Shown one piece after another: positions 1,098 through 63,796 of a DNA stretch of 64,000 nucleotides (its first letter is position 1; the number at the start of each line of letters is the position of its first letter). Where the stretch lies: positions 149,925 through 213,924 of IMG/VR virus record IMGVR_UViG_3300042519_004024, one strand, 5' to 3'. The notes beneath the pieces are model-generated. The model worked only from the letters and a program-made list of their open reading frames with translations, made no database searches and was not told the origin of the DNA. The position numbers and the translations under genes were made by a program.

Positions 1098-1140
1098 ATT
1101 AAATAAATATAATGTTGTGAATTTTTGAATAAATAGATAT

Positions 1141-1171
1141 AAAATAAAAAATCACCGATTTCTCAGTGATT
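1141..1171 (-). terminator. Intrinsic terminator closing the replication block
   Basis: Minus strand AATCACTGA-GAAA-TCGGTGATT (9-bp stem incl. one G:U, GNRA loop) followed by TTTTATTTT. Confidence 0.8.
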
Positions 1172-1382
1172 CTTTTAAATTTATATTTCCTTTTTCGTAA
1201 CTTGGTTCGTAAGGACAATGTAAACACCTGTTACCACAACATTTACCTCTCTTCTTATGATATTCTTCAGTCATAACCATTCTACCTTGTTTATCATAAT
1301 AAAAATCGTCTTGTTGTAATTTAGGTCCAAATTCTCTAACATATAATTGTTGTACCCAATCCTTAGATGCTCCTACATTCAT
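1152..1382 (-). CDS. Small Cys-rich protein, DUF5522-like
   Basis: DFYYDKQGRMVMTEEYHKKRGKCCGNRCLHCPY motif. Confidence 0.75.
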   Translation of the reverse strand: MNVGASKDWVQQLYVREFGPKLQQDDFYYDKQGRMVMTEEYHKKRGKCCGNRCLHCPYEPSYEKGNINLKESLRNR

Positions 1383-1383
1383 T

Positions 1384-1464
1384 TTAATTAGTTTTTCTTT
1401 GGTTATAAAACGCTAACAAAACTTGGTATGTTATCGTTATATTGTTTCCCCATTGTACTTTCAT
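1384..1464 (-). CDS. Unannotated 26-aa small ORF
   Basis: MKVQWGNNITITYQVLLAFYNQRKTN*; fills the gap between nrdJ stop (1468) and next ATG (1382) with 3-nt and 1-nt spacers. Confidence 0.55.
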   Translation of the reverse strand: MKVQWGNNITITYQVLLAFYNQRKTN

Positions 1465-1467
1465 AAC

Positions 1468-3352: not shown

Positions 3353-4732
3353 TTAAGATTCTTGTTCTTTTTGTTTTTTTCTTTCCAACAGTTCTTTTAT
3401 TCTGTTCCTGTTCTTTTCTTCCTTTTGTTCTTCATGACCAAGGAAAGTAACACTTTGTTCAGTGTCTATGTCTAACATACCATTGTCAAACTTACAATTT
3501 TCAAAGATAATTCCATCTTTACCGATTCTTGATTTAGTTATTGCAATCGTTGCTAAATTCATTTCTTTTTGTTGTAACGATTTAGCCACTGTTATAATAA
3601 CGTGTCCAACTTGTGCTTTCTTGATTGAACCCCCCATTTGATCTGTGGTTACAACTTCAGATGAAATTGAATTTCTATTACCCTGCGTTGCTGTCCATCC
3701 TGCGATATCCAACTCGTGACACATTGCTTCAAATCCTCGCATTACTGATCCTTCACTCTTCCATTCATCACCTAACATTTTGTCCGGTACAACACAATCA
3801 ATATAATCTAAAATAATAATATCAACCTTTATCCCTTCGGCAATCATTTTTCTAACCTGATTTTTAATCTGATTCATTGTTACAGTATCAGATGCCAATT
3901 TTTTCATAATCAACTTATTTTTTCTTGTTGATTGAATTTCTTTGACTCTTTCAGTAACTTCTTTTCTATTTTCAGAAAGGTCGTCGGGGTGTATTCCAGT
4001 CCAAAGTGTAAAGTGTTTTCTTTGGATAATTTTTGGGTTGTCCTCAAAAAATATTTGAAGAACGTTATACCCTAAGTTAAATGCGTGGTTAGCAATCTTT
4101 GTTGTAAACGTTGATTTACCAACACCGGTTGGTGCTAAAATTACACCGATTTCACCTTTAGCAAGTCCACCTTTTAATAGGTTATCTATGCCAGGTACTC
4201 CAATTGGAATTGGGTGTCTGTAATCATCATCCAATACCTCATCAAGGTTAAAAAACACATCCGTAGTTCCCTTATCTACTTCACCAACTTGAAGTGCTCC
4301 CCTAACCATTTCTTCTAACTTATCATAACTCTCGAAATCACCTTTATCGATGATTGATTGAGCCTTTGTCATTACTTTTTGGAGTTCTTGTTGTTTACAG
4401 AATTTAAGGGATTTTTCTTGAACAAAGATTGAACCTTCGTCAGATACGTTCTTAACCTGATTTAATGTGTCTAAAATACTCTTTTGAGCCATCGGTGAAC
4501 TGATTTCTGACTTAGTCAACTGTTCAAGGGTATCAAATGTCGGTGTATGCTCATACTTAGAATAATATTCTTTAATCATCTGACAAATGATTTTAAAATA
4601 TTGATTATCAAAGTAGTGAGGATCTATAACTTCTATGATGGAATTAGAGAAATCTTTGTAAGTAATAATGTTATTTAATAATTGAATTTGAAAAGTATTT
4701 CCTAAGTATCCGAAGTTTTTTTTGTCTGACAT
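3353..4732 (-). CDS. Replicative DNA helicase, DnaB/T4 gp41-like
   Basis: Walker A APTGVGKS, IILDYID, WTATQGNR, KSRIG. Confidence 0.92.
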   Translation of the reverse strand: MSDKKNFGYLGNTFQIQLLNNIITYKDFSNSIIEVIDPHYFDNQYFKIICQMIKEYYSKYEHTPTFDTLEQLTKSEISSPMAQKSILDTLNQVKNVSDEGSIFVQEKSLKFCKQQELQKVMTKAQSIIDKGDFESYDKLEEMVRGALQVGEVDKGTTDVFFNLDEVLDDDYRHPIPIGVPGIDNLLKGGLAKGEIGVILAPTGVGKSTFTTKIANHAFNLGYNVLQIFFEDNPKIIQRKHFTLWTGIHPDDLSENRKEVTERVKEIQSTRKNKLIMKKLASDTVTMNQIKNQVRKMIAEGIKVDIIILDYIDCVVPDKMLGDEWKSEGSVMRGFEAMCHELDIAGWTATQGNRNSISSEVVTTDQMGGSIKKAQVGHVIITVAKSLQQKEMNLATIAITKSRIGKDGIIFENCKFDNGMLDIDTEQSVTFLGHEEQKEEKNRNRIKELLERKKQKEQES

Positions 4733-4769
4733 ATTGTTGAGATTTTGTTCCTTGTTTTAATAAATATTG

Positions 4770-5222: not shown

Positions 5223-5226
5223 AATT

Positions 5227-7339: not shown

Positions 7340-8197
7340 TTAGAATGGTAATTCCTCAGATGGTTCATCATTTGCTTGTGGATCAACGATTGGCGTTTCT
7401 TCTTTCGTTTCGTTTCCGCCACCTAATGAAATTTCCGCTTCATCTCCGTAAACATATTTTTTAAGTTCTGAACTCCACATTGGTGTTTCACCTACAGCAA
7501 CTGCCTCTAAATATTCAACAGGTTTTTTAGAGTAAACGTCTTTCCAAGTAAGTTCATCTATCATCCAACCTTCCATAATTTCACTATCAGTGTGGATTGG
7601 TGCTGGATCATCATACATAATAGTTTGTACTACAGTATACTCTTTTCCTTGTGGTGTTTTTGCTTTTATTAGTTCAATAATCAAATCACGTCCTTTTTCA
7701 GAATCAGTTAAGTCACCTTTTGCTTTCCAAATAGGAAGGATTTTATCCAAGACACCTTCTTGTTTGTAGTTATGTTTGAATCTCCAAAACTTAACCCCAT
7801 CTTGTTCGTTATCACGATCAATAACTTTTACGATGTAGAATAAACGTGAACGGTATTGAGACGCCAATTCTTTATCTTCTTTTTTCCCTGTAGCAATAAG
7901 TTCGTTATAAACTTCTGTAAGTGGGGAACGCTCGTTGTCGTTTTTTTCAGGATCATACAACTTAACCCATTGTCCATTAACTTGGATTTCGTGATACCAA
8001 ACTTCAACAAATGGTGAAGAACCATCTTTTGTAGGTAGAATACGAATTCTTCTTTGTGCTGATTTTTCATTTTTTTGAAGAATTGCTGAAAAATATCTTT
8101 TCATTCTGTCTTCTTGTGAGATGTTTTGTCTCTGTGAACTACTTGGTGTTGAGTTCTTTTCGTACTGTGCAAGTACTGCGTCAATTGAATTTGCCAT
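7340..8197 (-). CDS. Single-stranded DNA-binding protein, T4 gp32-like
   Basis: IRILP...PFVEVWYH, YIVKVIDR, GRDLII, acidic tail ending EELPF. Confidence 0.85.
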   Translation of the reverse strand: MANSIDAVLAQYEKNSTPSSSQRQNISQEDRMKRYFSAILQKNEKSAQRRIRILPTKDGSSPFVEVWYHEIQVNGQWVKLYDPEKNDNERSPLTEVYNELIATGKKEDKELASQYRSRLFYIVKVIDRDNEQDGVKFWRFKHNYKQEGVLDKILPIWKAKGDLTDSEKGRDLIIELIKAKTPQGKEYTVVQTIMYDDPAPIHTDSEIMEGWMIDELTWKDVYSKKPVEYLEAVAVGETPMWSSELKKYVYGDEAEISLGGGNETKEETPIVDPQANDEPSEELPF

Positions 8198-8236: not shown

Positions 8237-8264
8237 ATTATAAGTGATTTTTAATAAATGTCAA
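8237..8264 (-). promoter_or_regulatory. Sigma70-consensus promoter for replication block
   Basis: Minus strand TTGACA-N16-TATAAT, 40 nt upstream of SSB ATG and just downstream of a terminator. Confidence 0.7.
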
Positions 8265-8964: not shown

Positions 8965-9192
8965 TTAACCGTTTAATAATGTTTTAACACCTGCTGGTGT
9001 CTCGACTCTTAATGTTCTATTAGTTTTAACGGTGTTGTCAAATCTTTCTATTAAACCGTCTTTCATTCTTATTGTATAACAGTCACCTGTATCTAGATCA
9101 CAAACTTGTTTGTGATCGGCATCTATTTGTTTTTCAGACACTCTAGTGTCTTTTCTCAAATAATCATCTAATAAATTTTTAACGTTACTCAT
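8965..9192 (-). CDS. Hypothetical late protein
   Basis: 75-aa ORF preceded by TATTTATA motif (9207-9214). Confidence 0.7.
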   Translation of the reverse strand: MSNVKNLLDDYLRKDTRVSEKQIDADHKQVCDLDTGDCYTIRMKDGLIERFDNTVKTNRTLRVETPAGVKTLLNG

Positions 9193-9218: not shown

Positions 9219-12200
9219 TTAATTAGGATTAAGTACAAAATATTCGTAATATTCTGTAAAAACAACAACGTAATCATTATAAGTATTGATAACACCACTA
9301 CTTACATTATTAACAACTTCATTTTTAATTTCTTCTGCAGTTAGTGGTGGCGGTCCAAAAGCCACAGGAGTGTCCCAAGTAGTTAAATACAATTGTGATA
9401 ACGCTTTACCATATTGTTTATATTCATTTGTATCGGGGTTTATAGTTTTTAGTGATTCTATAAGTGGTACCATAGATTGATAGAATGATACCATAAAACT
9501 ACTAGATGTAGTATTTTCAGTAAAACTAGCAAATACTCTGGATGTTCCAGCAACATCAACACATGTTTGTTCTTTTAGGTAAGTGTCCAAACTTCCATTG
9601 TGTTTAGTCTCTGTTGATATCTCGTAAAAATTATTATTAATACTATTCAATTCTGTTGTTACCGGATCGTAAGAATTTAATGGTCTTGTTAACGCAATAC
9701 CTAAAAGTAATGTCCTTAATCTACTATCATTTGTTACTGATTTTATTATTGGTATAATTTCCTCTAAAGAGAATGGTGTTCGTTTAACTTCAACAAATGG
9801 TAATGTTGTGTATTTAGTTATTTCTCTACACTTATCTAAACCTGTTTTTGTTACCGTTATTGTTGGGTCAGTATTAACAAGTGTTTCTTTTTTTATTTCC
9901 TCATCAGTTTTTGTTTTCTTAATTTTTTCTTTATATGATTGTAGAATTTTTTGATTTACATTAATCAACAAATTATCAACATTTGGTAAACTATATTTTG
10001 GGATTCTTGTTCCTTTAAATTTAGTGGTAAATCCGTTTTCTGAAATGTTATGATCAACTTCATAAATCCAATATGGACCATAAAATAATGGTACGTGCCT
10101 TAAAACAAAATACATTGTTGGTTGTATCATAGCATTACCCATAGACTCGACCCCACAACTATAAGACCTAGATTTATAAATACTATACATCGATACTGAT
10201 TGTTGGGCAACTTTATCTCCAGACACCGAACCACCAATATCCGCAAACACTTTAAAAGACTCTGAAGTATTTTTCATTTCAGACATATCTAAATCTAAAT
10301 TTTTAAACATGTTCTGATTTTGTATACCAAAATCAACACTAAACCCAACTACTTTGTTTGTTTTAGAGTAATCCCTATTAGGGTCAGAAATTCTTAATGG
10401 GTTGTCAGGCATTCTTAAATCAAAACTATCATCATCAAATCTAATAAAAGAGTTTTCTTTTGGTTTTGGGTATTCTGAAGGATTACCCATGTAAAGACAT
10501 AAAAACTTAGGACTTGATTTTGTATAATCCACTTCTAGATATGTTCCAAACATTGAGTTGGGTATTTCAATATCTATTGGTTGTCCGTTTTTAACTGCCG
10601 ATTGTATACCATAAAAATTTATATATGCAGGCATTGGGAAAAACATAAACTGATTATCACCTAATATGTTGCTAACTAATGTCATCAAATTCATATCAGG
10701 GTTGTTTGTTGTGTCCATTCTTTTTATAACTTTATCTATGTCAACAACGTATGTATCACCAATATCACTATTAGCCCTATCCATAAATAAAAAGTCTTCA
10801 AACAAGGTTACATATTTTAAATCAGACCCTGCAATCCATTTATCATTAAACGCCTTTAATGTATTATAAAGGGTTAATTTACCAACATCTCCAGTTACGG
10901 CATTTGTTGTATTATTATTTACAGTAATATTACTTAAGTTTTTATTTAAATTTAAAAAAGTTTGGTTTAATATTTTTTCTTGTATTGATTTTTGATCAGT
11001 TAAATACTGATTTATTAATGTTGTAAACGTTTGTTTATTTAAATTAGAATCTTCTAATTTTTTCTGCGAATATAATCTTATTAATGGGTACGTCAGTATT
11101 ATATTGTCAGATGTAAATTCAATATCATTATCAATAAAAAAATCTGCAACCGTCGATTTTGGTGTTCCCGGTAATGGTATAGTTGTTTGTGGTTGGGTTA
11201 CAGGTAATTGTTGTTGTACTGTTTGTGTTTGTTGTGGTTGTGGTTGTTGTAAACAATTTGAAGTTAATATCTCATTAGTAACACAAACAACCGCAGCATT
11301 AGGTTCACCAACATAATTATCATCATCAAAATCTAACGTATATGTTTTAATCGCATTTGCAGATTGATTTTGATTAACAGGATTAAAAGTTGAGGTATTT
11401 GCAATTTTTCTTGCACAAAACTGTACTCCGTTAGGAATATTAAATTCTTCAACTTCAAGATAGTAAACTTCTCCTTCTAAATATGTTGTACCTGTACCTA
11501 CAACGTTTGAAATAACATTATTTGGTATTACAACATTGAATATTTCATTTGAATTGCAACAACTTTGAAAAGTATAATGTGTTGATGGTGGTATAGTTAC
11601 ATTTGTAGTGGATGTAGGTGGTACCACAGTTGTTGCCAAAGGTGTAGCCGTTGGCGGTGTTGATGGGAATACGGGACTTGGTTGCCCTGGATAGTCAACT
11701 CCGGCAATCGATGAAAACCCTAAATATGTTCTTAATGTATTCCAAGCATCTTGGTTTTGAGTAACACTTTGTAGTAACGTAACATTTGTACCGTCACCAG
11801 GTAATGTTCCTTTTACGTATGGTTTAAATTCGTATTTATCAAATTCAGGGACAAACTCTTTAAGATTAGAAAACGAATTAAATAACCTTCTGTCAAAATT
11901 TCCTGGATTTCCTAATTTTAAAACACAATCAAAATTTAAAAATTCTTTTAAAGATGAGGTAAATGTTAATATCTGTTTTTGTCCTAATGTTTTACCATCA
12001 ACGTCCTCGTTAACAAAAGTAATACCTGTTTTATTAACTAAAAATAAATTAAGTATTTGACTGTATAATCTTTTTTGTGCGGAATTCGCAATTTTATTAC
12101 TTGACGTATAAGATGGATCAATTATCTCGTCTTTTAAAATTAAATTTTTAGAAAGTGGCTTATAATTACAAAACCCAATAAATTGTTCTTCAAACTTATC

Positions 12201-16181: not shown

Positions 16182-16488
16182 AATAAAAAATATGTGTATC
16201 CAATGCAGATTTGTAGTCTTGCAGTGCCGCAACTAGCGGAAAAGGTATAACTAATATTGTTCCATCAGGTATATTTGTTTCCAAACCACCATAAAGCGGA
16301 TTTGCCATCATAATTAACCAACCAAAATAAGGTGCTCCGTATTTTTCATAACTTATCTTATCCAATCTACTTTGATTTTTTCTATACACATATCTTTGAT
16401 CCGAAGACCTTAGTGGTAAGTTTAAGAATGGTACTACCGTTTGTTTACCATTTATTAAAAAGTTTTGGTATCTATCGTAATATTGCAT
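16171..16488 (-). CDS. LysM-like baseplate protein (gp53/tail X-like)
   Basis: RLDKISYEKYGAPYFGWLIMMANP...IPDGTILVIP. Confidence 0.85.
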   Translation of the reverse strand: MQYYDRYQNFLINGKQTVVPFLNLPLRSSDQRYVYRKNQSRLDKISYEKYGAPYFGWLIMMANPLYGGLETNIPDGTILVIPFPLVAALQDYKSALDTHIFYYGR

Positions 16489-22880: not shown

Positions 22881-22920
22881 TTAGTCTATTTTATTTATAA
22901 ATAGATAAATTTTTATTTTT

Positions 22921-24759: not shown

Positions 24760-24795
24760 ATTTTTTATTTTCTATATAAATAGACAGTTATAATG

Positions 24796-25684: not shown

Positions 25685-25729
25685 AATAAATTTTTCTTAA
25701 AAAATAAAGGATAAATATTGTATGTAAAC

Positions 25730-26270: not shown

Positions 26271-26382
26271 GTCTTATTTTTTTAATTTGTTTTATTTATT
26301 TATAAATATCTATTGTTTTATTTTTTTTCTATTTACTTTTTTCTGGTTTAAAATTATCCTTCTACTAGACCGGACTTAATTA

Positions 26383-27395: not shown

Positions 27396-27420
27396 AATTA
27401 TTTTATTTTATAAATATTAA

Positions 27421-30675: not shown

Positions 30676-30762
30676 TTTTTTCTGTATTTTTTATTTATGG
30701 TTTTATTTTTTTATATAAATACCTTGAAAAAAACCAAAAAACTTTACATTTAAATAATATTT

Positions 30763-32716: not shown

Positions 32717-32775
32717 ATAATATAAATACTTTGATTGATTTTTTATTAATATTTACTATTTTTATTTATAATATA

Positions 32776-34539: not shown

Positions 34540-34550
34540 TATTTATAGTT

Positions 34551-35270: not shown

Positions 35271-35293
35271 GATATTTATATAAAAAATATCAT

Positions 35294-39713: not shown

Positions 39714-39742
39714 AATATAAGAGTAAAATGTACTCTTGTCAA
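39714..39742 (-). promoter_or_regulatory. Sigma70-like promoter of DNA polymerase with palindromic spacer
   Basis: TTGACA-N17-TATATT; AAGAGTA/TACTCTT inverted repeat spans the spacer. Confidence 0.65.
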
Positions 39743-44576: not shown

Positions 44577-44630
44577 CTTTTTATTTTATAAATAGTTTTT
44601 TATTGTAATAATTCTTTAAAAAAAATTAAT

Positions 44631-45503: not shown

Positions 45504-45527
45504 TTTTTTATTTAATAAATATAAAGT

Positions 45528-47475: not shown

Positions 47476-47503
47476 GATAAATACTTTGTTGCGAGTATTT
47501 ATA
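47476..47503. promoter_or_regulatory. Back-to-back late promoter motifs driving divergent operons
   Basis: AGTATTTATC on minus (47476-47485) and AGTATTTATA on plus (47494-47503). Confidence 0.65.
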
Positions 47504-50072: not shown

Positions 50073-50104
50073 TATTTATATTATAATTTAATAAAAGTTT
50101 ATAT

Positions 50105-55421: not shown

Positions 55422-56065
55422 GAATATTAATTTTAGTTCTTTCATATGACGATTCAGGAATATATACTGAATTTTATAAAACACAAAAACAAACGTGGGA
55501 TAGTTTACCCGTTGAAGGTGTTGAAACATATTACTATTTTGGTAATAATAATGAAAATATAATAGTCGGTAATAATATTTTAACAGATGTCCCTGAGAGT
55601 TTAATAAATTGTGGTAATAAATCTATAGAAGCCTTTAAACTTATTTCTAATATGGATTTTGATTTTGTTTTTAGAACAAATTCAAGTTCGTATATTGATA
55701 AGAATCTATTAAAATTACATTTAGAAAATAAACCCAAAAACAATTTTTATTCTGGAATTTTAGGGAATCATTTTGGTATACCTTTTTGCTCAGGATCCGG
55801 GTTCGTTCTATCTAAAGACTTAGTGCATTTATTAATAGACAATAAAGAAAAATTAGATTTTAGTTTGATTGACGACGTTTGTTTTGGAAAATTTCTTTCT
55901 TCTAATAATATTCCTTTAATAAATTCATATAGATTTGATTTAACTTATAATACAAATGAAATTGATGAGGGATTTTTTCACTATAGACTTAAAACTAATA
56001 ATAGAATAAACGACATAAATAATATGATATTAATACACAAAAAAAAATTAAAATGGAAAAAATAA
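55418..56065 (+). CDS. GT31 (galactosyltransferase/Fringe)-like protein
   Basis: QTW, K...AFK, FDFVFRTNSSSYID, FCSGSGFVLSKDLV, IDDVCFG. Confidence 0.65.
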   Translation: MRILILVLSYDDSGIYTEFYKTQKQTWDSLPVEGVETYYYFGNNNENIIVGNNILTDVPESLINCGNKSIEAFKLISNMDFDFVFRTNSSSYIDKNLLKLHLENKPKNNFYSGILGNHFGIPFCSGSGFVLSKDLVHLLIDNKEKLDFSLIDDVCFGKFLSSNNIPLINSYRFDLTYNTNEIDEGFFHYRLKTNNRINDINNMILIHKKKLKWKK

Positions 56066-56637
56066 ATTTAATATACGAAAAACAATGTTCAACACCTTCA
56101 GATATAAATGAACATCTACCAACATTACTTAAATATGCTAATGAATGTGAACACATAACAGAAATGGGTGTTAGGTGGGTATCATCTACTTGGCCACTAC
56201 TTTTATCTAACCCAAAAAAAATGATTAGTTACGATATTGTTAGACATCCTAAAATTGAGGAGGTAATTGATTTATCTAAAAATTACAACATAGATTATCA
56301 ATTTATTCAATCGGATGTTTTAACTATAGAAATAGAAGAGACGGAATTATTATTTATAGATACATTACACACATATAATCAATTAATCTGTGAGTTGGAT
56401 ATTCATTCTGACAAATGTTCAAAATATATCATTTTACACGACACCACAACTTTTGGGGATGTCGATGAAAATGTATATAGTCACGCAAGTCCTCTAATTA
56501 TAAATGAATCAAAAAACAAACAAGGTTTATGGACAGCAGTGTTAGATTTTTTAGAATCGGAAAAAGGGAACCTTTGGAAAGTAAAAGAAAGATTTACAAA
56601 TAATAATGGATTAACTATATTAGAAAGAAAAAAGTAA
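56053..56637 (+). CDS. Class I SAM-dependent methyltransferase (Methyltransf_24-like)
   Basis: EMGVRWVSST, LLFIDTLHTY, IILHDT, NNNGLTIL. Confidence 0.8.
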   Translation: MEKINLIYEKQCSTPSDINEHLPTLLKYANECEHITEMGVRWVSSTWPLLLSNPKKMISYDIVRHPKIEEVIDLSKNYNIDYQFIQSDVLTIEIEETELLFIDTLHTYNQLICELDIHSDKCSKYIILHDTTTFGDVDENVYSHASPLIINESKNKQGLWTAVLDFLESEKGNLWKVKERFTNNNGLTILERKK

Positions 56638-57341
56638 TGTTAACAATTCATACTTTAACATATAACGAAGAATTAATGATAGAATTTTTTGTAAATCATT
56701 ATAGAAAATTATTTCCAAATTGTATTATTAAAATATATGATAATTATTCTACCGATAATACTGTAAATATTGCAAAAAATTTGGGGTGTGAAATTTTTTA
56801 TTATGACTCAAATAATAATTTGTCTGATTCTAAATATTTAGAGATAAAAAATAACTGTTGGAAAAATTCAAATACCGATTGGGTTATTGTTTGCGATTGT
56901 GATGAATTAATTCAAATAAACCAAGAAGAGTTAATTAATGAGGATAAAAACGGAACTACCCTTTTTAAATTTAAAGGTTATCATATTATGAATACAGATG
57001 ATGAATTAAATTTAAATAATTTATCATTTGGGTTTCCTGATACTATGTATGATAAAATTTTATTATTTAATAAGTCAAAAATTACTGATATAAATTATGA
57101 ACCGGGTTGTCATTCGGCATCTCCAATAGGAAGTGTAATATATTCTAAAAATATTTATAATCTTTTACATTACAAATATTTAGGAGTTAACTATACTGTT
57201 GATAGATATAAAATGTTTGCGGAAAGAATATCAGACGAAAATTTAAAATTTGGATGGGCAATTCATTATTTAAAAAAAGAAAACGAAATAGTTGAGGATT
57301 ACATAAAAAATAAAAAAAATTTAATAAAAGTTAAAAATTAA
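56637..57341 (+). CDS. GT2-like glycosyltransferase
   Basis: YNEE, YDNYSTDNT, DWVIVCDCDE, PGCH, LLHYK. Confidence 0.8.
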   Translation: MLTIHTLTYNEELMIEFFVNHYRKLFPNCIIKIYDNYSTDNTVNIAKNLGCEIFYYDSNNNLSDSKYLEIKNNCWKNSNTDWVIVCDCDELIQINQEELINEDKNGTTLFKFKGYHIMNTDDELNLNNLSFGFPDTMYDKILLFNKSKITDINYEPGCHSASPIGSVIYSKNIYNLLHYKYLGVNYTVDRYKMFAERISDENLKFGWAIHYLKKENEIVEDYIKNKKNLIKVKN

Positions 57342-57342
57342 A

Positions 57343-57906
57343 ATGAAAATAAACGAAAGAGGATATTGGGAAACCTTTGATTCTGAAGGACATATTTTTG
57401 ATTCTTCATTATCAAATAAAGTGATTGAATTTTCAATCGAAAATAATGTAAAAACATTTTGTGATTTTGGATGTGGAATGGGTGATTATGTATCAAAATT
57501 ATTAGACAATGGGTTTATATGCGAAGCTTACGATGGAAATCCGAACACAGAAAAATTAACTAATGGAATTGCTAAAACTTTAGATTTATCAATTCCATTT
57601 GAATTAAATAAAAAATTTGATTGTGTTTTAAGTTTTGAAGTTGGGGAACATATACCTTCTGAATACGAGAGCGTTTTTATTAATAACTTGTGTAATCACT
57701 CTGAAAATTTAATTATTGTGAGTTGGGCGGTAGAAGGACAACCAGGTCACGGACACGTAAATTGTAGAAATAATGATTATATTATAAAGGAGTTTGAAAA
57801 AAGAGATTTTATTTATGATGAAATCAATAGTACATCTCTACGTAATAGTCATTCAAATGCTTGGTGGTTTAAAAACACAATAATGGTATTTAAAAAAAAT
57901 AAATAA
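57343..57906 (+). CDS. Class I SAM-dependent methyltransferase
   Basis: DFGCGMG, FDCVLSFEVGEHIP, GQPGHGHVNC. Confidence 0.85.
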   Translation: MKINERGYWETFDSEGHIFDSSLSNKVIEFSIENNVKTFCDFGCGMGDYVSKLLDNGFICEAYDGNPNTEKLTNGIAKTLDLSIPFELNKKFDCVLSFEVGEHIPSEYESVFINNLCNHSENLIIVSWAVEGQPGHGHVNCRNNDYIIKEFEKRDFIYDEINSTSLRNSHSNAWWFKNTIMVFKKNK

Positions 57907-57907
57907 T

Positions 57908-58474
57908 ATGGAACATTTTTATAAAAAAATAGATGGATGGTTTAATATGGAAAACGAATATTCAGAATTATTAAACTTTTGCAATGATGGTTCTAATTTT
58001 GTTGAACTTGGAGCATGGAAAGGTAAAAGTACTTGTTATGCGGTTGTTGAACTATTAAACAATAATAAAAAAATAAATTTTTTTACTGTTGACACATTTG
58101 AAGGAGTGACTGCAGGATCAGATTTGAATGAAGTAAATGCTTACCTTAAAGAAGATAAAAATATACTCGATCAATTTATAAAAAACACTGAACCGATTAA
58201 AGAAAATTTTAAATATTTTATTTATGATAGTGCAACAGCATCTAATTTGTTTGAGGACTCGTCGGTTGATGCGATATTCATCGATGCGGGACATTCTTAT
58301 GAATCGGTTAAAAAAGATATAGAATCTTGGTTTAATAAAATGAAACCAGACAGTATTATGTCCGGTCACGACTACTGTGAATCTTGGCCTGGAGTTATTA
58401 AAGCAGTTGATGAATTTTTTGGTAAACCGGATAAGGTTATTAATAGATGTTGGTTTAAATACGTAAAAAAATAA
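57908..58474 (+). CDS. Class I SAM-dependent methyltransferase (Methyltransf_24-like)
   Basis: VELGAWKGKST, VDTF, IFIDAGHSYE, GHDY, WPGV..AVDE. Confidence 0.85.
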   Translation: MEHFYKKIDGWFNMENEYSELLNFCNDGSNFVELGAWKGKSTCYAVVELLNNNKKINFFTVDTFEGVTAGSDLNEVNAYLKEDKNILDQFIKNTEPIKENFKYFIYDSATASNLFEDSSVDAIFIDAGHSYESVKKDIESWFNKMKPDSIMSGHDYCESWPGVIKAVDEFFGKPDKVINRCWFKYVKK

Positions 58475-58478
58475 TAAC

Positions 58479-59510
58479 ATGAAAAAAATATTAATTTTAG
58501 GTGGTGGTGGATTCATAGGAGGACATTTATCTAAAAGATTATATGATGAAGGAAACTTTGTTAGGGTTGTTGATATTAAACAACATGAATATTTTAAACA
58601 AGAAGAATATTGTACAGAATTTATATTAGGTGATTTAAGAGATCAGAACTTAGTTTCAAGAGTTATGTTCGCACCGAACCAAACATCGTTAAATGATATT
58701 GAAAACTCATTTGATGAGGTATATCAGTTAGCTGCAGATATGGGTGGTGCTGGATATATTTTTACAGGGGAGAATGATGCAAATGTTATGCACAATTCAG
58801 CACTTATTAATTTAAATGTTGTTGATTATGCAACAAAATTTAATGTAAAAAAAGTATTTTATTCTTCATCCGCATGTATGTACCCTGAACATAATCAGCT
58901 TAATCCTGAAAATCCTAACTGTGAAGAATCTTCAGCATACCCAGCGAATCCCGATAGTGAATACGGTTGGGAAAAGTTATTTAGTGAAAGATTATACCTC
59001 TCATTCAAAAGAAATTACGGACTAAACGTAAGAATTGCAAGGTTCCATAATATCTTTGGGCCTTACGGAACTTGGGATGGTGGTAAGGAGAAGGTCCCTG
59101 CAGCGATGTGTAGAAAAGTTGCTGAATCAGATACAGAAATTGAAGTGTGGGGTGACGGTAAACAAACAAGATCCTTTCTTTATATAGATGAATGTATAGA
59201 AGCGGTATTAAGATTAATGGATAGTAATTTTGTTGGCCCGGTTAACATAGGTTCTGAAGAAATGGTAACAATAAATCAATTGGCTCAAATGGCTATTGAT
59301 ATTTCAGAAAAGAATATTAAAATTAAAAATATACAAGGAGACGAATTTCAACTCAAGTACGGTTTTAAATGTCCTGTTGGTGTGAGGGGTAGAAATTCAG
59401 ACAACAAGCTTTATGAAACAAAAATTGGTTGGTCAGTTTCTGAACCACTAATCGAAGGTATGAAAAAAACATACGAATGGATTAATAAACAAGTATTTTT
59501 AAATAAATGA
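58479..59510 (+). CDS. NAD-dependent epimerase, GDP-mannose 3',5'-epimerase-like
   Basis: GGGGFIG, LAADMGG, SSACMYPE, YGWEK, RFHNIFGPYGTWDGGKEK.PAAMCRK, GVRGRNSDN. Confidence 0.88.
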   Translation: MKKILILGGGGFIGGHLSKRLYDEGNFVRVVDIKQHEYFKQEEYCTEFILGDLRDQNLVSRVMFAPNQTSLNDIENSFDEVYQLAADMGGAGYIFTGENDANVMHNSALINLNVVDYATKFNVKKVFYSSSACMYPEHNQLNPENPNCEESSAYPANPDSEYGWEKLFSERLYLSFKRNYGLNVRIARFHNIFGPYGTWDGGKEKVPAAMCRKVAESDTEIEVWGDGKQTRSFLYIDECIEAVLRLMDSNFVGPVNIGSEEMVTINQLAQMAIDISEKNIKIKNIQGDEFQLKYGFKCPVGVRGRNSDNKLYETKIGWSVSEPLIEGMKKTYEWINKQVFLNK

Positions 59511-60241
59511 CAAGAAGAAAACCCCAACCTCAAAACGAAGAAAGTGAGTCTAAACCTTTTTCAAAAAAAGATTTTATAAATTCCGTCATAAAGAAAAAAG
59601 TTAAAAATAAATTTTTAACAGAAAATCAAGAACATTATTATAACCTTTTAAAAAATAATCAAATCACTATTTGTTCAGGACCCGCAGGTGTAGGTAAATC
59701 GTACATAGCAATGAAAGCTGCGGTAGACTTATTAATGGATACTAATAATTCATATGAAAAATTAGTTATTGTTCGTCCAGCAGTTGAAGCGGAAGAAAAA
59801 CTTGGATCTTTACCTGGTAATCTTGAAGAGAAATTAGATCCATATATTTTTCCATCTTATTACTTATTAAATAAAATTATAGGTAAAGATGCTCGCGAAA
59901 AATTAAAAGATGCCGAAATTATAGAAGTTTTTGCATTAGCATATATGAGAGGTATGAATATAGACAATACAATTTTAATTTTTGAAGAATCTCAAAATTC
60001 AAGTCCAAATCAAATGAAATTACTATTGACAAGAATAGGGTTCAATAGTAAATTTTTTATATCGGGAGATATCGAACAAACTGATAGGTATAAAGATAAA
60101 AAACATTCAGGACTTTACGACGCAATACAAAGATTTAAAAATATACATGATGTCGGTGTTTTTGAATTTGGTGACGGTGATGTTGTTAGAAATCCACTGA
60201 TAAGTAAGATATTAAAAAAATATGATGAGAATAGGGATTGA
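59507..60241 (+). CDS. phoH: PhoH-family ATPase
   Basis: GPAGVGKS, RPAVE, LGSLPG, YMRG, EESQN, LTRIG, GDIEQTD, VVRNPL. Confidence 0.92.
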   Translation: MTRRKPQPQNEESESKPFSKKDFINSVIKKKVKNKFLTENQEHYYNLLKNNQITICSGPAGVGKSYIAMKAAVDLLMDTNNSYEKLVIVRPAVEAEEKLGSLPGNLEEKLDPYIFPSYYLLNKIIGKDAREKLKDAEIIEVFALAYMRGMNIDNTILIFEESQNSSPNQMKLLLTRIGFNSKFFISGDIEQTDRYKDKKHSGLYDAIQRFKNIHDVGVFEFGDGDVVRNPLISKILKKYDENRD

Positions 60242-60872
60242 GATTAACGGAGTTTTAAGGGACACTATTGGGAAGTTTACTCAATTGTATGAAAAACATA
60301 TGATTGATGAAAAAGAAGACGGTAACAAAACTTACGAGCTGGATATGTCGGGTAATACAGAGGAATTAATCCCTAAAGAAGATTTTGAATACAGGATTTT
60401 AAGTGATGTAACGTCATTAAATTTAATGGATCATTTTAGATTTAATGATGAAAATGAATTATACTCTTTTATGTACGAAGATTTTGCAATGCAAATTTTT
60501 GGTCACGCAGGATCATCAGAAACTTTTTCATTTAATGACTTAAATGAATTTTATTTAAAATATAGAGATGAAAATGAATTGTTAATAGTTTCTGATGAAA
60601 TGGGTAAATCAAAACCCGCATCTTTATTCTTTCTTTCAAAGTTCGGATGTTTAGTAGAAAAAATAAAATTTTACTCAAATACCACAATTAATTCAATGTG
60701 GGATGAAATAGACATTTTACTTACGGCAAATCCTTCCTTATTATTAGAAAAACCAAATAATAAGATTGTCGTTAAATATAACACACCTTATAATAAAAAT
60801 GTCAATTGTGAATATGAGATTAGTTCATTGAAGGAGTTTGACGAAATTTTACAAAAAAACAAATTATGTTAA
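60222..60872 (+). CDS. 5'(3')-nucleotidase-like HAD fold protein with degenerate catalytic motifs
   Basis: MRIGIEINGVLRD (vs IGIDIDGVL), DILLTANP (vs lIDD), TPYN. Confidence 0.55.
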   Translation: MMRIGIEINGVLRDTIGKFTQLYEKHMIDEKEDGNKTYELDMSGNTEELIPKEDFEYRILSDVTSLNLMDHFRFNDENELYSFMYEDFAMQIFGHAGSSETFSFNDLNEFYLKYRDENELLIVSDEMGKSKPASLFFLSKFGCLVEKIKFYSNTTINSMWDEIDILLTANPSLLLEKPNNKIVVKYNTPYNKNVNCEYEISSLKEFDEILQKNKLC

Positions 60873-61150
60873 AATTTTTAGGAGAGAATTATTACCTAGA
60901 CATTAATGAGCTAGAGAAACAGGTTAGTTATGAAAAATCAGTACTACCTATAACTGGAGATACTGAGAACTCGGACCAACAAATTAGTGTTACAAGATAT
61001 GACACATTTAAAAGTCTAATTGAGGTATTACTAACTGAGAGAGAAGAGTTAGATGAAACTTTAGGTATTCATGGAGCGAAAGATTTAACAATACCATTTA
61101 AAATCGCATTCAATACTTTATTAATAAACAATATATTAAAAACACTTTAA
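60866..61150 (+). CDS. Hypothetical protein
   Basis: 94-aa ORF overlapping upstream stop. Confidence 0.7.
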   Translation: MLKFLGENYYLDINELEKQVSYEKSVLPITGDTENSDQQISVTRYDTFKSLIEVLLTEREELDETLGIHGAKDLTIPFKIAFNTLLINNILKTL

Positions 61151-61154
61151 AAAA

Positions 61155-62219
61155 ATGGAATTAGAAAAAATTCAAAAACTTGAGAAGTCATTAGAGAACC
61201 TAATTAATAAATCCGCAAGAATTTATTTTTTAGTACAGGACACAAAAGGTAACCCAAAAGCCGGAATAAAATACATTTATGACATGGCATTAACATTAAA
61301 AAATAATGGGTTTAACTCTATTATTATTCACGAAACGAAAGAATATAGTGGAGTTGCTGAGTGGTTAGGGGAGAAATACATGGAATTACCTCACCAACCA
61401 ATAGAAAATCAAAATTTGGCAATTTCACCTGAAGATTTTATTATTATACCTGAAATCTACGCACACGTAATGGAGCAATTAAAAAATTTCCCGTGTGGTA
61501 AAATTGTTTTGTGTCAAGCATACGACCAAATACTTGAAACGTTACCTCCAGGGATTACTTGGGCTCAGTATGGTTTTATTAAATGTATTACAACTTCTGA
61601 GACACAAAAAAAATACATTTCAGAAATTATGAAAAATGTAAATATCGATATGGTTGAACCATATATTTCAGAACATTTTACAAGAAAAGAAAAACCATCA
61701 AAGCCAATCATTTCTATTCACACAAGAGAACCTAGAGATACTGCCAAAATTATAAAAACTTTTTATTTGAAGTTCCCACAATATAGATGGATAACATTTA
61801 GAGATATGAGGGGTATTAAACAAGAAGATTTTTCTAAATTTTTGAAAGATTCATACGTTTCAGTTTGGGTTGATAACGAGTCGGCATTTGGAACATATCC
61901 TTTAGAGTGTATGATAACGGGGACACCGGTAATTGGTAAGGTGCCTAACTTAAAACCTGAATGGATGAACGAAGAGAATGGTGTTTGGACATACCAATTT
62001 AATGAGATTGTTGACATTATTGCTAACTATACACAAAATTGGTTAGAGGATAATATCTCTGATGAACTTTATAATAAAATGTATGAAACAGGTATGAAAT
62101 ATTCACAAAAAGACATGTTTGAAACATCAGTATTAGGTTTGTTTAATGAGTATTTTGAAAAAAGAACAAATTCGTTTTCTGAACAATTAGAAAAAATAAA
62201 AGTATCTGAAGAAAAATAA
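61155..62219 (+). CDS. GT-B glycosyltransferase (GT4-like)
   Basis: DFIIIPE, ESAFGTYPLECMITGTPVIG. Confidence 0.75.
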   Translation: MELEKIQKLEKSLENLINKSARIYFLVQDTKGNPKAGIKYIYDMALTLKNNGFNSIIIHETKEYSGVAEWLGEKYMELPHQPIENQNLAISPEDFIIIPEIYAHVMEQLKNFPCGKIVLCQAYDQILETLPPGITWAQYGFIKCITTSETQKKYISEIMKNVNIDMVEPYISEHFTRKEKPSKPIISIHTREPRDTAKIIKTFYLKFPQYRWITFRDMRGIKQEDFSKFLKDSYVSVWVDNESAFGTYPLECMITGTPVIGKVPNLKPEWMNEENGVWTYQFNEIVDIIANYTQNWLEDNISDELYNKMYETGMKYSQKDMFETSVLGLFNEYFEKRTNSFSEQLEKIKVSEEK

Positions 62220-62224
62220 AAAAA

Positions 62225-63028
62225 ATGGAAAAATTTAATGTATCAGTAATATTACCAATAAACTCATCAGCACATAGAGGTTTCGATGATTTATTTGACA
62301 GAGCAATAAAATCTTTATCAATACAAAGTTTACCAGTTAATGAACTAGTGATTGTACATTCAGGTGAAGATTCTCTAAAAAACTTTTTATCAAGTTATGA
62401 TTTTAGTGGACTAACCACAAACATAGTACAAAATGATGGTGATTTTGATTTTTGTACACAAGTTAATTTAGGTGTTGAAAACGCCAAAAGTGAATGGATT
62501 AGTGTGTTAGAATTTGATGATGAGTATTCAAGTATTTGGTTTAAAAATGTTAAAAGATTTGCCGATTCTTATCCTGAAGTAGATGCATTCCTTCCTTTGG
62601 TTGTCGATACTGACGATAAAGGTATGTTCGTAGGGTTTACAAATGAAGCCACGTTCGCAGCAAGTTTAAATACGGAAATCGGGTATCTAACTAACGATGT
62701 TTTACTTTCATACCAAAACTTCCAAACTAGTGGGATGGTTATTAAAAAATCAACATTTAAAGATAATGGAGGATTTAAAGCATCAATGAAACTTACTTTT
62801 GTTTATGAACTACTATTAAGACTTACTTATAATTCTACAAAAATAATGACTGTACCAAGAATTGGTTACAAACATATGAACCTTAGAGAAGGATCTATTT
62901 TTTGGAATTACAAAAATGGTGAAGAAAAAATTTCAGATAATGAGGTATCTTTTTGGATCGATTCAGCAAAAAAAGAACATTTCTTCACAAATGATAGAAA
63001 TATAAAATATGTAGCAGAACAACAGTAA
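62225..63028 (+). CDS. GT2-like glycosyltransferase
   Basis: VSVILP, AIKSL..Q, NLGVENAKSEWISVLEFDD, GGF. Confidence 0.8.
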   Translation: MEKFNVSVILPINSSAHRGFDDLFDRAIKSLSIQSLPVNELVIVHSGEDSLKNFLSSYDFSGLTTNIVQNDGDFDFCTQVNLGVENAKSEWISVLEFDDEYSSIWFKNVKRFADSYPEVDAFLPLVVDTDDKGMFVGFTNEATFAASLNTEIGYLTNDVLLSYQNFQTSGMVIKKSTFKDNGGFKASMKLTFVYELLLRLTYNSTKIMTVPRIGYKHMNLREGSIFWNYKNGEEKISDNEVSFWIDSAKKEHFFTNDRNIKYVAEQQ

Positions 63029-63030
63029 TA

Positions 63031-63780
63031 ATGTTTCTATCCGATGAAAGCAGTGGGAATACATATGAAACGAATAAGACGGTAAAAAAACAAAAAAGTA
63101 ATAACTATTTTGATGTCCGTGAAGAAGAGGCTGTTAGAGATTATATCTTAGCAGAAACAAAAGAAGAAAAAGAAAAAATTTATAATGAATATCTTCGTAT
63201 GCCGTTAGACAAAATGATTGAGTCTATCATACGAAGATATAAATTATATAGAAAAGACATGGAATACATTGATGTCCACCATGATACCCATTCTTTTTTA
63301 ATGACAAAAGTGGATAAGTTTAAGCCAGCAAAAAATAAAAAGGCGTATTCTTATTTTGGTACAATATGTAAAAATTATTTAATGGGTCAAATTCTAAAAG
63401 ACCAAAAAGAAACAAACAGAAAAATTTCATACGAGGATATATCGGCAACTTTAGAAAATCGTCCTGATATGGTTTATTATTTAGAGTTTGAAAAAATAGA
63501 TGCCGAAAGAATAATTGATGTTTTTTTAGTTGACTTAAGAGCTTATGTTTATGAAAACACTTTAGTTGAAAATGAATTTAAATTAGGACAAGCACTGATT
63601 GAGTTGTTTGATAATTACGGTAACATTTTTATAGGTAATGATAATAATAAGTTCAATAAAAATATCGTACTCTTATCCTTAAGGGAAATGACTAATATGA
63701 ACACAAAAGAGATTAGGACGTTTTTAAAGAAATACAAATTACTATATTTACAGACTATAAAAAAAATACATAATCAATAA
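63031..63780 (+). CDS. Late-transcription sigma factor, T4 gp55-like
   Basis: NYF...AV..Y; KFKPAKNKKAYSYFGTICKNYL resembles the gp55/sigma region-2 'kFdP.k...aFaYFt.I..n' motif. Confidence 0.7.
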   Translation: MFLSDESSGNTYETNKTVKKQKSNNYFDVREEEAVRDYILAETKEEKEKIYNEYLRMPLDKMIESIIRRYKLYRKDMEYIDVHHDTHSFLMTKVDKFKPAKNKKAYSYFGTICKNYLMGQILKDQKETNRKISYEDISATLENRPDMVYYLEFEKIDAERIIDVFLVDLRAYVYENTLVENEFKLGQALIELFDNYGNIFIGNDNNKFNKNIVLLSLREMTNMNTKEIRTFLKKYKLLYLQTIKKIHNQ

Positions 63781-63796
63781 TTAAATATTTATTGTT

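What the first reader, a model, noticed from the sequence alone, without database searches (positions are those of the whole stretch)
1102..63793. Late promoter is TATTTAT(A/T) on the sense strand, the reverse complement of T4's TATAAATA
Seen: TATTTATW lies ~3-40 nt upstream of starts on the coding strand, regardless of gene direction. Minus-strand genes: 1102, 9207, 22896, 24775, 26301, 27409, 30714, 32721, 44587, 45514 (plus TATTTATC at 47476). Plus-strand genes: 34540, 35273, 47496, 63786. Most are structural genes; SSB and polymerase instead have TTGACA-type promoters. Established: T4 gp55 recognises a single -10 box TATAAATA. Inference: the gp55-like sigma at 63031-63780 reads a changed -10 box (TAtttAT). 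Copies before the DnaB helicase (4759), SNF2 (32763) and GT operon (50073) may be real or AT-rich noise.
Basis: partly seen in the sequence, partly recalled or inferred. Interest (0 to 1): 0.6.

Follow-up and report, generated by a model that had tools for sequence, protein, structure and literature searches.

The report
Strict TATTTAT phage promoter box
A strictly conserved seven-base box, TATTTAT, sits on the coding strand just upstream of about a fifth to a quarter of the genes of this uncultured freshwater jumbo phage and its many relatives; it is most likely a one-box promoter read by a divergent phage sigma factor, and it often sits so close to the ATG that the mRNA would have no leader.

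Summary
Counted over the whole window, TATTTATW is no more frequent than chance (40 against 40.4). Within 45 nt upstream of starts on the sense strand it is strongly enriched: 17 of 55 window genes against 2.2±1.4 in shuffles, and 60 of 273 genes genome-wide against 11.3±3.2. The antisense count is near background. The heptamer is strict, and no single-base variant is enriched. It has no -35 or -33 partner. It lies either 4-6 nt from the ATG or 9-19 nt away across an A-rich spacer. It is kept in relatives: 80 of 80 loci downstream of the sigma-like gene, 41 of 47 orthologous promoters in a 292-kb relative, and the top upstream 7-mer there (99 of 344 genes).

The host is inferred to be Bacteroidota, because there is no Shine-Dalgarno signal and TTTG/TAnnTTTG promoters occupy the other genome arm. 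ORF 63031-63780 has a confident sigma region-2 fold. Its similarity to T4 gp55 specifically is marginal, and its C-terminal domain is unassigned.

"Late only" fails because the DnaB and SNF2 copies are conserved. The reverse-complement relation to T4 is true of the letters, but nothing suggests it reflects mechanism. The link between this sigma and the box is an inference, and no transcription start sites could be obtained. Verdict: a new variant of a known kind.

The parts
1102..1109 (-). TATTTATT box, 5 nt before the ATG (1097) of the gp25-like baseplate wedge gene 633-1097. Leaderless class. A second copy at 1128-1135 follows a T-run.
   Evidence: kept in relative G002
4759..4766 (-). TATTTATT box, 27 nt before the DnaB-like helicase gene 3353-4732.
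   Evidence: kept upstream of the G002 ortholog at 92% identity
9207..9214 (-). TATTTATA box, 15 nt (A-rich) before the 75-aa ORF 8965-9192.
22896..22903 (-). TATTTATA box inside the palindrome TATTTATAAATA, 16 nt before the 2129-aa ORF 16491-22880.
24775..24782 (-). TATTTATA box, 16 nt before the 612-aa ORF 22921-24759, which has a weak tape-measure match.
25711..25717 (-). TATTTAT(C) copy after a hairpin and T-run, 26 nt before ORF 24926-25684. Doubtful, because it is not kept in G002.
26301..26308 (-). TATTTATA box, 31 nt before the tail tube gene 25782-26270.
27409..27416 (-). TATTTATA box directly after the terminator hairpin of the sheath gene, 14 nt before the 45-aa ORF 27258-27395, which abuts ORF 26383-27258.
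30714..30721 (-). TATTTATA box, 39 nt before the tail sheath gene 27460-30675.
32721..32728 (-). TATTTATA box, 5 nt before the ATG of ORF 32201-32716. Leaderless class. Lies in a divergent gap.
32763..32770 (+). TATTTATA box, 6 nt before ATG 32776 of the SNF2-type helicase gene (to 34539).
   Evidence: kept in G002
34540..34547 (+). TATTTATA box, 4 nt before ATG 34551 of ORF 34551-35270. Leaderless class.
35273..35280 (+). TATTTATA box, 14 nt before ORF 35294-36415, which has a head-tail adaptor-like C-terminus.
44587..44594 (-). TATTTATA box, 11 nt (AAAATAAAAAG) before the 1272-aa ORF 40758-44576.
45514..45521 (-). TATTTATT box, 11 nt before ORF 44631-45503.
   Evidence: kept in orthologous loci with varying flanks
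47477..47483 (-). TATTTAT(C) box, 11 nt before the 645-aa ORF 45528-47465. Lies in a divergent gap.
47496..47503 (+). TATTTATA box, 14 nt before ORF 47517-48260. Lies in the same divergent gap.
50073..50080 (+). TATTTATA copy after a hairpin and T-run, 25 nt before the first gene (50105) of the glycosyltransferase/sugar operon that ends with the sigma-like gene. Doubtful, because it is not kept in G002.
63786..63793 (+). TATTTATT box, 4 nt before ATG 63797 of a 121-aa ORF. Leaderless class.
   Evidence: TATTTAT plus 4-6 nt plus ATG is invariant in 80 of 80 related loci, although the gap's length and sequence vary
63031..63780 (+). Divergent sigma factor of 249 aa. Residues about 25-131 form the sigma region-2 fold. 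Residues about 155-249 form a helical domain of unassigned fold. Candidate reader of the box.
   Evidence: at least 8000 90%-identity clusters of relatives, none given a functional name among the 120 listed

Best explanation
TATTTAT, preceded by a base that is seldom T and followed by A, T or rarely C but never G, is a strict one-box promoter on the non-template strand. It would be used by the host's RNA polymerase once that enzyme carries a phage-encoded sigma factor. The most likely sigma is the divergent 249-aa protein of ORF 63031-63780.

The box sits where the host's own -7 element sits. When it ends 4-6 nt before the ATG, transcription should start at or next to the A of the ATG and give a leaderless mRNA. 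This applies to 22 genes on the 214-kb contig and to 5 sites in the window. When it ends 9-19 nt before the ATG, the transcript gets a very short A-rich leader of the kind Bacteroidota use in place of a Shine-Dalgarno site.

The box drives the structural genes of the window. It also drives some replication genes and many small genes elsewhere, so it is better described as the phage's own (middle and late) promoter class than as late-only.

Shown: the enrichment, the strand bias, the strictness, the spacing, the lack of a second box, the conservation, and the sigma fold. Inferred: that it is a promoter, where transcription starts, which sigma reads it, and when.
For: - Enrichment on the sense strand only, against shuffles of the same upstream stretches. 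It is the top motif in an unbiased k-mer scan.
- No single-substitution variant shows sense-biased enrichment.
- No conserved position upstream of the box except the base at -1.
- Spacing to the ATG is bimodal, 4-6 and 9-19 nt. Canonical TTTG-N19-TAnnTTTG boxes in the same genome also end 4 nt from the ATG at 9 genes.
- In Flavobacterium johnsoniae the -7 box ends 4-5 nt before the start site (PMC6847099).
- 12 of 61 boxes follow a hairpin plus T-run, against 9 of 212 other genes; p = 3e-4.
- Conservation: 80 of 80 loci after the sigma gene. In 64 distinct structural loci, 89 of 261 genes carry it, against 5.5 expected. In the 292-kb relative, 99 of 344 genes carry it, against 6.5 expected. 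41 of 47 orthologous promoters are kept, against 15 of 129 genes without the box; p = 4e-21.
- No beta-prime-type or T7-type polymerase was found in this contig. No beta-prime type was found in two relatives that are 96% and 99% complete, and each of them has exactly two sigma-like genes.
- The other phage sigma is SigA-like with regions 1.2, 2 and 4, and its -35-reading helix is close to sigma70's. That fits the TTGACA-N17-TATAAT sites better than it fits this box.
- In a relative, the bS21 gene carries the box 21 nt upstream. A paper reports bS21 expressed together with structural genes late in infection (PMC9723584).
Against: - Promoter function and the leaderless starts therefore rest on position and conservation alone.
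- Both phage sigmas co-occur in every large relative examined, so their distribution cannot tell which one reads the box.
- ORF 63031-63780 lies at the end of an operon whose only visible promoter candidates are TATTTAT boxes (47496 and 50073), and the 50073 copy is not conserved. How this sigma is first expressed is unexplained.
- Its C-terminal domain has no assigned fold.
- Phages whose homologue of this sigma is 25-31% identical show no TATTTAT enrichment. That is compatible with co-evolution of sigma and box but is not evidence for it.
Confidence: 0.6

Rival explanations
1. The box is a promoter, but it is read by the other phage sigma (271 aa, SigA-like, contig 108525-109340, outside the window), or by host sigma A redirected by a phage factor. 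ORF 63031-63780 would then read something else.
For: The 271-aa sigma lies in an operon that begins with a host-type promoter, so it could be made early and switch on the TATTTAT class, including the operon that holds ORF 63031-63780. Both sigmas co-occur in all relatives examined. The box also precedes non-structural genes.
Against: The 271-aa protein keeps a sigma70-like region 4.2, yet TATTTAT sites have no -35 or -33 element. If the start is the A of the ATG, the position that primary sigmas require to be T (-7) is A or T depending on the spacer; this rests on general knowledge, not on a test here. A separate, conserved TTGACA-N17-TATAAT class exists that suits this sigma. No third motif was found that would be left for ORF 63031-63780.
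Confidence: 0.2
2. The box acts at the RNA level and is not a promoter. It could be an AU-rich translation enhancer or ribosome landing site replacing Shine-Dalgarno, or an RNA processing site.
For: It lies close to start codons, and there is no Shine-Dalgarno signal in this genome (18 of 273 genes). A-rich tracts follow many copies.
Against: The distance to the ATG ranges from 4 to about 39 nt, with two modes. The general start context (A at -3, A-rich -10 to -14) is present at genes without the box. An exact heptamer with no tolerated variant is unusual for a translation enhancer. Copies sit directly after terminators, where a new transcript has to begin. Host-type -7 boxes occupy the same place.
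Confidence: 0.08
3. The box is the binding site of a phage DNA-binding regulator (activator or repressor) that overlaps promoters of another kind.
For: Some copies form the palindrome TATTTATAAATA (22892-22903, 26297-26308). The gene immediately downstream of the sigma gene encodes a small basic protein of unknown function.
Against: Most copies are not palindromic, and the signal is strand-specific. No other promoter-like element accompanies the box.
Confidence: 0.07
4. The pattern is chance in AT-rich intergenic DNA.
For: There is no enrichment when the whole window is counted on both strands. The genome is 31% GC.
Against: z is about 15 against composition-matched shuffles of the very same upstream stretches. 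The pattern is strand-biased, the heptamer is exact, and it is conserved across relatives at 52-96% protein identity while the flanks vary.
Confidence: 0.01

Closest known systems
T4 late transcription: gp55 sigma with the single -10 box TATAAATA, helped by gp33 and the gp45 clamp
   Same: A phage-encoded, highly divergent sigma. A strict AT-only promoter of one box without a -35 element, placed just upstream of structural genes. Dozens of copies per genome. A profile of the sigma family touches gp55 at E = 0.093.
   Different: The sense strand reads TATTTAT, not TATAAATA. Sense TATAAATA without TATTTAT occurs at only 4 genes. The sigma is 249 aa, against 185 for gp55, and has an extra C-terminal domain. 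It matches SigA and sigma E region 2 better than it matches gp55. No gp45-type clamp domain was found in this incomplete contig. The box also precedes non-late-looking genes, and many copies are leaderless.
Bacteroidota housekeeping promoter: -33 TTTG and -7 TAnnTTTG, read by sigma A(Bfr) (PMC6847099)
   Same: Same place relative to the ATG as the genuine TAnnTTTG boxes of this genome, ending 4-5 nt before the presumed start. With a 5-nt spacer, TATTTATW matches TAnnTTTG at T-12, A-11, T-8 and T-6. The same no-Shine-Dalgarno, A-rich start context applies.
   Different: The near-invariant G-5 and T-7 are replaced. There is no -33 element. The TAnnTTTG class is confined to the 0-115 kb arm of the contig, while TATTTAT occurs throughout. 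In F. johnsoniae 87% of leaders exceed 10 nt, whereas here about a third of the boxes imply no leader.
Sigma cascades of large phages, such as SPO1 gp28 and gp33-34 (general knowledge; SPO1 cascade mentioned in PMC13401047)
   Same: Host sigma for early genes, then phage sigmas with their own promoter consensus. This phage clade carries two sigma genes and three promoter-like classes.
   Different: The order of use and the pairing of sigma with promoter have not been tested here. One of the classes has a single box.
Freshwater Bacteroidetes 'bS21 phages' (Chen et al. 2022, PMC9723584)
   Same: Genome size (281-292 kb in near-complete relatives), GC of 31-32%, freshwater metagenome origin, and inferred Bacteroidota host. 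The relative G002 encodes bS21.
   Different: That paper does not mention sigma factors or promoters (0 occurrences of either word). Membership of this exact contig was not tested phylogenetically, and its own bS21 region is missing because the contig is about 71% complete.

Membership tests
Sigma-70 family (ORF 63031-63780) | Region 2 (sigma-2) helical domain | tested here: met
   AF2 model, pLDDT 91. Residues 25-131 superpose on sigma E region 2 bound to -10 DNA (4lup_A: Z 9.6, 2.5 A, 91 of 91 residues), on RpoS (5h6x_A: Z 9.4) and on SigA domain 2 (4x8k_A: Z 8.8). All 50 top rows are sigma factors. 56 of 80 family members hit Pfam Sigma70_r2, best E = 5e-7, though the window protein itself is below cut-off at 14-17 bits. 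Profile against PDB SigA: E = 0.0036.
Sigma-70 family (ORF 63031-63780) | Region 4 helix-turn-helix that reads a -35 element | tested here: inconclusive
   Whole-protein alignments to sigma E and SigH span residues 28-249. The C-terminal domain folded alone (pLDDT 88.6) has no significant PDB match; the best is a SigD model at E = 2. No Sigma70_r4 hits recur in the family.
Sigma-70 family (ORF 63031-63780) | Binds core RNA polymerase and directs initiation at a specific promoter | not testable with these tools
   Needs biochemistry. The host is unknown.
T4 gp55-type late system | Specific relatedness to gp55 | tested here: inconclusive
   Profile against 7d7c_F gp55: E = 0.093, weaker than against SigA. 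gp55 is not among the 50 best structural rows. There is no PHROG or Pfam hit.
T4 gp55-type late system | Promoter TATAAATA on the non-template strand at -10 | tested here: not met
   The sense strand carries TATTTAT. Over 100 nt upstream, sense TATAAATA occurs at 18 genes against 36 antisense. Within 45 nt it occurs at 12 genes, 8 of them overlapping TATTTAT in a palindrome and only 4 without it.
T4 gp55-type late system | Single box, no -35 element | tested here: met
   Position-by-position information content shows nothing above noise from -45 to -2 of the box.
T4 gp55-type late system | gp45 sliding clamp and gp33 co-activator | tested here: inconclusive
   Pfam DNA_PPF (gp45 N-terminal domain) gave no match in the contig. 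The contig is only about 71% complete, gp33 was not searched, and the near-complete relatives were not searched for the clamp.
Bacteroidota sigma A(Bfr) -33/-7 promoter | TAnnTTTG with near-invariant T-7 and G-5 | tested here: not met
   The box is TATTTAT followed by A, T or C and never G. The only variant with sense bias, TATTTGT, belongs to true TAnnTTTG boxes.
Bacteroidota sigma A(Bfr) -33/-7 promoter | -33 TTTG about 19 nt upstream | tested here: not met
   No upstream signal is present, whereas TTTG-N17-21-TAnnTTTG is found sense-upstream at 13 genes elsewhere in the genome.
Bacteroidota sigma A(Bfr) -33/-7 promoter | Box ends 4-5 nt before the transcription start | not testable with these tools
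   No start-site data are available. Only the distance to the ATG is known. It is 4-6 nt for 22 genes, the same as for 9 genuine TAnnTTTG boxes.

The most novel reading that the evidence does not exclude
A very abundant, so far unnamed family of phage sigma factors reads a strict one-box promoter, TATTTAT. The family has at least 8000 90%-identity clusters and 1130 clusters at 50% identity. It combines a sigma region 2 with a C-terminal domain of unassigned fold. This would be the last tier of a three-tier programme in freshwater jumbo phages of Bacteroidota: host TTTG/TAnnTTTG promoters, then TTGACA/TATAAT promoters read by a SigA-like phage sigma, then TATTTAT. About a third of the roughly 100 TATTTAT units per genome would be leaderless mRNAs in a phylum where leaderless mRNAs are uncommon. 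That could be tied to the ribosomal protein bS21 that these phages encode.
Probability: 0.35. Interest if true: 0.7.

Novelty: new variant of a known kind. Interest (0 to 1): 0.55.

Why it matters
Little is known about how phages of Bacteroidota other than crAss-like phages organise transcription, and I found no paper on it. The hosts use unusual promoters and have no Shine-Dalgarno sites. This finding gives a sharply defined and easily searchable promoter box, with about 60 copies on this contig and about 100 in a complete relative. It also gives a candidate sigma factor from a very abundant protein family that none of the listed source records names.

It allows transcription units of a globally common freshwater phage clade to be predicted. 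It predicts widespread leaderless mRNAs, which can be tested directly in existing lake metatranscriptomes. It also offers orthogonal sigma-promoter pairs for genetic tools in Flavobacteriia and other Bacteroidota.

Tried and rejected
- Cultured relatives: blastn of the sheath gene and tblastn of the 645-aa protein against GenBank phages found nothing. The sigma-like protein found only two weak hits.
- Pfam and PHROGs left most genes driven by the box unnamed, so "structural or late only" could not be tested by function.
- Phage RNA polymerase: Pfam searches for the beta-prime domain (this contig and two near-complete relatives) and for the T7 type (this contig) found nothing. The T7-type control rang nowhere, so that negative is weak. 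phiKZ-like or crAss-like polymerases could escape Pfam. The 2337-aa, 2129-aa and 1272-aa ORFs stay unassigned.
- A third promoter motif for a second phage sigma: genes with neither box yielded only the small TTGACA-N16-19-TAnnnT class.
- C-terminal domain of the sigma folded alone: no significant PDB match.
- Using distant homologues to look for covariation of sigma and box: suggestive at most (CTATTTA at 34% identity, no TATTTAT at 25-31%), and the loci are too small to be conclusive.
- Reading the box as T4's TATAAATA on the template strand, by analogy with phage AR9: considered and set aside. Nothing requires it, and region-2 domains read the non-template strand.


Full report
**What the window is.** The window is the last 64 kb of a single 213,924-bp contig with 30.8% GC. 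IMG/VR holds it as a virus record estimated to be 71% complete. The window encodes a gp25-like baseplate protein, a tail tube, a sheath, a head-tail adaptor-like protein, ribonucleotide reductase, DnaB, an exonuclease, UvsX, SSB, a family-B DNA polymerase, an SNF2 helicase and a long glycosyltransferase/sugar operon.

No cultured phage in GenBank is close to it. IMG/VR, by contrast, holds hundreds of relatives. Near-complete relatives are 281-292 kb. One of them, G002, encodes ribosomal protein bS21. That matches the freshwater, Bacteroidetes-infecting "bS21 phages" of 293-331 kb and 31-34% GC described by Chen et al. 2022 (PMC9723584). That paper does not mention sigma factors or promoters.

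**Checking the observation.** Counted over the whole window on both strands, TATTTATW is at chance: 40 matches against 40.4±6.7. The signal is positional. I called genes crudely, taking the longest non-overlapping ATG ORFs, which gave 273 genes and 93% coding. I then asked in how many genes the heptamer lies within 45 nt upstream on the sense strand, and compared that with dinucleotide-preserving shuffles of those same stretches.
- Window: 17 of 55 genes against 2.2±1.4.
- Whole contig: 60 of 273 against 11.3±3.2.
- Reverse complement: 25 against 17.8±3.8.

An unbiased k-mer scan ranks TATTTAT and ATATTTAT first among upstream 7-mers and 8-mers. Intergenic DNA is about 7% of the genome but holds 91 of the 204 copies. 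None of the 21 single-base variants shows sense-biased enrichment. The one apparent exception, TATTTGT, belongs to the host-type box. The box is therefore a strict heptamer. The base before it is seldom T, and the base after it is A, T or sometimes C, but never G.

**Anatomy.** There is no second box. From -45 to -2 of the heptamer, no position carries information beyond a mild T/A richness.

The distance to the ATG has two modes.
- Twenty-two genes have 4-6 nt, typically TATTTAT-NNN-T-ATG.
- Most of the rest have 9-19 nt of A-rich sequence such as TATTTATAAAATAAAAAG-ATG.

Twelve of 61 boxes directly follow a GC-rich hairpin and T-run, against 9 of 212 other genes; p = 3e-4. A new transcript would have to begin at such places.

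**The host context explains the spacing.**
- Only 18 of 273 genes have anything resembling a Shine-Dalgarno site.
- Starts show A at -3 and A-richness at -10 to -14. This is the pattern described for Flavobacterium johnsoniae (PMC6847099).
- The 0-115 kb arm of the contig carries canonical Bacteroidota promoters, TTTG-N19-TA(T/C)(A/C)TTTG. These are absent from the structural arm.
- Nine of those boxes end exactly 4 nt before the ATG.
- In F. johnsoniae the -7 box spans -12 to -5 and ends 4-5 nt before the start site, and 87% of leaders exceed 10 nt.

TATTTAT therefore occupies the place of a -7/-10 element. The boxes with 4-6 nt spacing predict leaderless mRNAs. That is unusual for this phylum, but this phage also does it with host-type promoters.

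**Conservation.**
- Downstream of the sigma-like gene, all 80 related loci (67-100% protein identity) keep TATTTAT plus 4-6 nt plus ATG. The rest of the gap varies from 0 to about 25 nt and in sequence.
- In 64 distinct loci around homologues of ORF 44631-45503, TATTTAT is again the top upstream 7-mer: 89 of 261 genes sense, 35 antisense, 5.5 expected. True orthologues keep the box with varying flanks.
- In the 292-kb relative G002 it is the top 7-mer: 99 of 344 genes, 30 antisense, 6.5 expected, with the same two spacing modes.
- Gene by gene, 41 of 47 genes with the box here have it upstream of the G002 orthologue, against 15 of 129 genes without it; p = 4e-21.

The DnaB (4759) and SNF2 (32763) copies are conserved. 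The glycosyltransferase-operon copy (50073) and the copy at 25711 are not.

**Who reads it.** No beta-prime-type or T7-type RNA polymerase was detected in this contig. No beta-prime type was detected in two relatives that are 96% and 99% complete, and each of them has exactly two sigma-like genes.

One sigma lies outside the window (contig 108525-109340, 271 aa). It is SigA-like, with regions 1.2, 2 and 4. Its best PDB match is Clostridioides difficile SigA at E = 1.4e-43, and its region 4.2 helix is close to that of sigma70.

- It has no Pfam or PHROG hit above threshold.
- 56 of 80 diverse family members hit Sigma70_r2.
- The family profile hits SigA region 2 at E = 0.0036 and T4 gp55 at E = 0.093.
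- A confident AF2 model (pLDDT 91) superposes residues 25-131 on isolated region-2 structures at 2.5-2.8 A, Z 9.4-9.6, and all 50 top rows are sigma factors.
- Its last 95 residues, folded alone, match nothing significantly.

So it is a sigma factor. "gp55-like" holds only in the loose sense of a very divergent phage sigma.

The family is very large: at least 8000 clusters at 90% identity and 1130 clusters at 50% identity. None of the 120 best clusters listed carries a functional name.

**Assigning the box to this sigma is an inference.** A one-box promoter suits a sigma without a recognisable region 4. The SigA-like sigma suits the small class of TTGACA-N16-19-TA(T/A)A(A/T)T sites better. There are seven of these, all intergenic and sense-oriented, including the SSB and polymerase genes. 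TTGACA is invariant upstream of SSB in 49 of 50 distinct relatives. That class is itself ambiguous, because it contains TTTG-N19-TAnnTTTG-like sequence.

Both sigmas co-occur in every large relative examined, so their distribution does not separate them.

How ORF 63031-63780 is first expressed is also unexplained. It ends a 17-gene operon whose only visible promoter candidates are TATTTAT boxes, and the 50073 copy is not conserved.

**Timing.** Nearly every gap upstream of a structural gene in the window carries the box. In G002 the bS21 gene carries it 21 nt upstream, and bS21 was reported as expressed with structural genes in late-stage infections (PMC9723584). The box also precedes the DnaB and SNF2 genes and about 35 genes in the arm with host-type promoters, sometimes in tandem with a TAnnTTTG box. 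"The phage's own promoter class, including late genes" fits better than "late promoter".

**Relation to T4.** Here the T4 word on the sense strand is the rarer orientation over 100 nt upstream (18 genes against 36). Within 45 nt it occurs without TATTTAT at only 4 genes. Because the box lies on the non-template strand at the place where a region-2 domain acts, there is no need to suppose template-strand reading or descent from the T4 system. The system works like T4 late transcription but does not pass the membership tests for it.

**Limits.** No transcript ends could be obtained. Gene starts come from a crude ORF caller, although the main results were reproduced on an independent genome and in orthologous alignments. 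The host is inferred from sequence signals only. The contig is incomplete.

**Verdict.** This is a new variant of a known kind: a phage sigma with a one-box promoter.

Noticed in passing
window 8237-8264 (-) upstream of SSB 7340-8197; window 39714-39742 (-) upstream of DNA polymerase 36749-39649: TTGACA-N16-17-TATAAT/TATATT promoters. The SSB copy sits directly after a hairpin terminator. TTGACA is invariant in 49 of 50 distinct relatives, while the spacer varies and the -10 alternates between TATAAT and TATATT(TG). Five more such sites occur elsewhere on the contig. They may be read by the SigA-like phage sigma, or they may be host-type TTTG-N19-TAnnTTTG variants.
   Followed up: partly
contig 108525-109340 (-), outside the window (L001:1081-1896): A second phage sigma factor of 271 aa with regions 1.2, 2 and 4. 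Its closest solved relative is C. difficile SigA (E = 1.4e-43). It is 71-85% identical in four large relatives.
   Followed up: partly
whole contig, for example contig 37301-37879, 47468-47857 and 97766-98605 (outside the window): Host-type Bacteroidota promoters (TTTG-N19-TAnnTTTG) are confined to the 0-115 kb arm. Nine end exactly 4 nt before the ATG, which implies leaderless early mRNAs as well. No Shine-Dalgarno signal is present (18 of 273 genes).
   Followed up: partly
relative G002:156088-156282 (+) (L274): The near-complete 292-kb relative encodes ribosomal protein bS21, preceded by TATTTAT plus 21 nt. This ties the clade to the published freshwater bS21 phages. The matching region is missing from this 71%-complete contig, which may also explain why no capsid, portal or terminase gene was seen in the window.
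   Followed up: partly
window 9219-16232 (-), 16491-22880 (-), 40758-44576 (-): Three very large ORFs (2337, 2129 and 1272 aa) lie among tail genes and have essentially no family match. Their function is unknown.
   Followed up: no
window 47517-48260 (+): The first gene after the divergent promoter pair carries a DUF3721 match (E = 2e-8) at its N-terminus.
   Followed up: no
window 50105-63028 (+): A 16-gene, tightly packed operon contains glycosyltransferases (families 2 and 2_5) and an NAD-dependent epimerase/dehydratase. It ends with the sigma-like gene.
   Followed up: partly
contig about 5.8-7.0 kb (outside the window): An unusual GC-rich stretch with runs of G and C (GGGGCCCC-like) lies in an otherwise 31% GC genome, flanked by divergent small ORFs. 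It could be a terminus, an origin or a packaging site.
   Followed up: no
L176 (JGI 3300017917 contig; sigma homologue 34% identical): In a more distant phage, also with TAnnTTTG boxes and 29% GC, three genes including the one after the sigma gene are preceded by AACTATTTA(A/C) and not by TATTTAT. Phages with 25-31% identical homologues (L272, L273) show no TATTTAT enrichment.
   Followed up: partly
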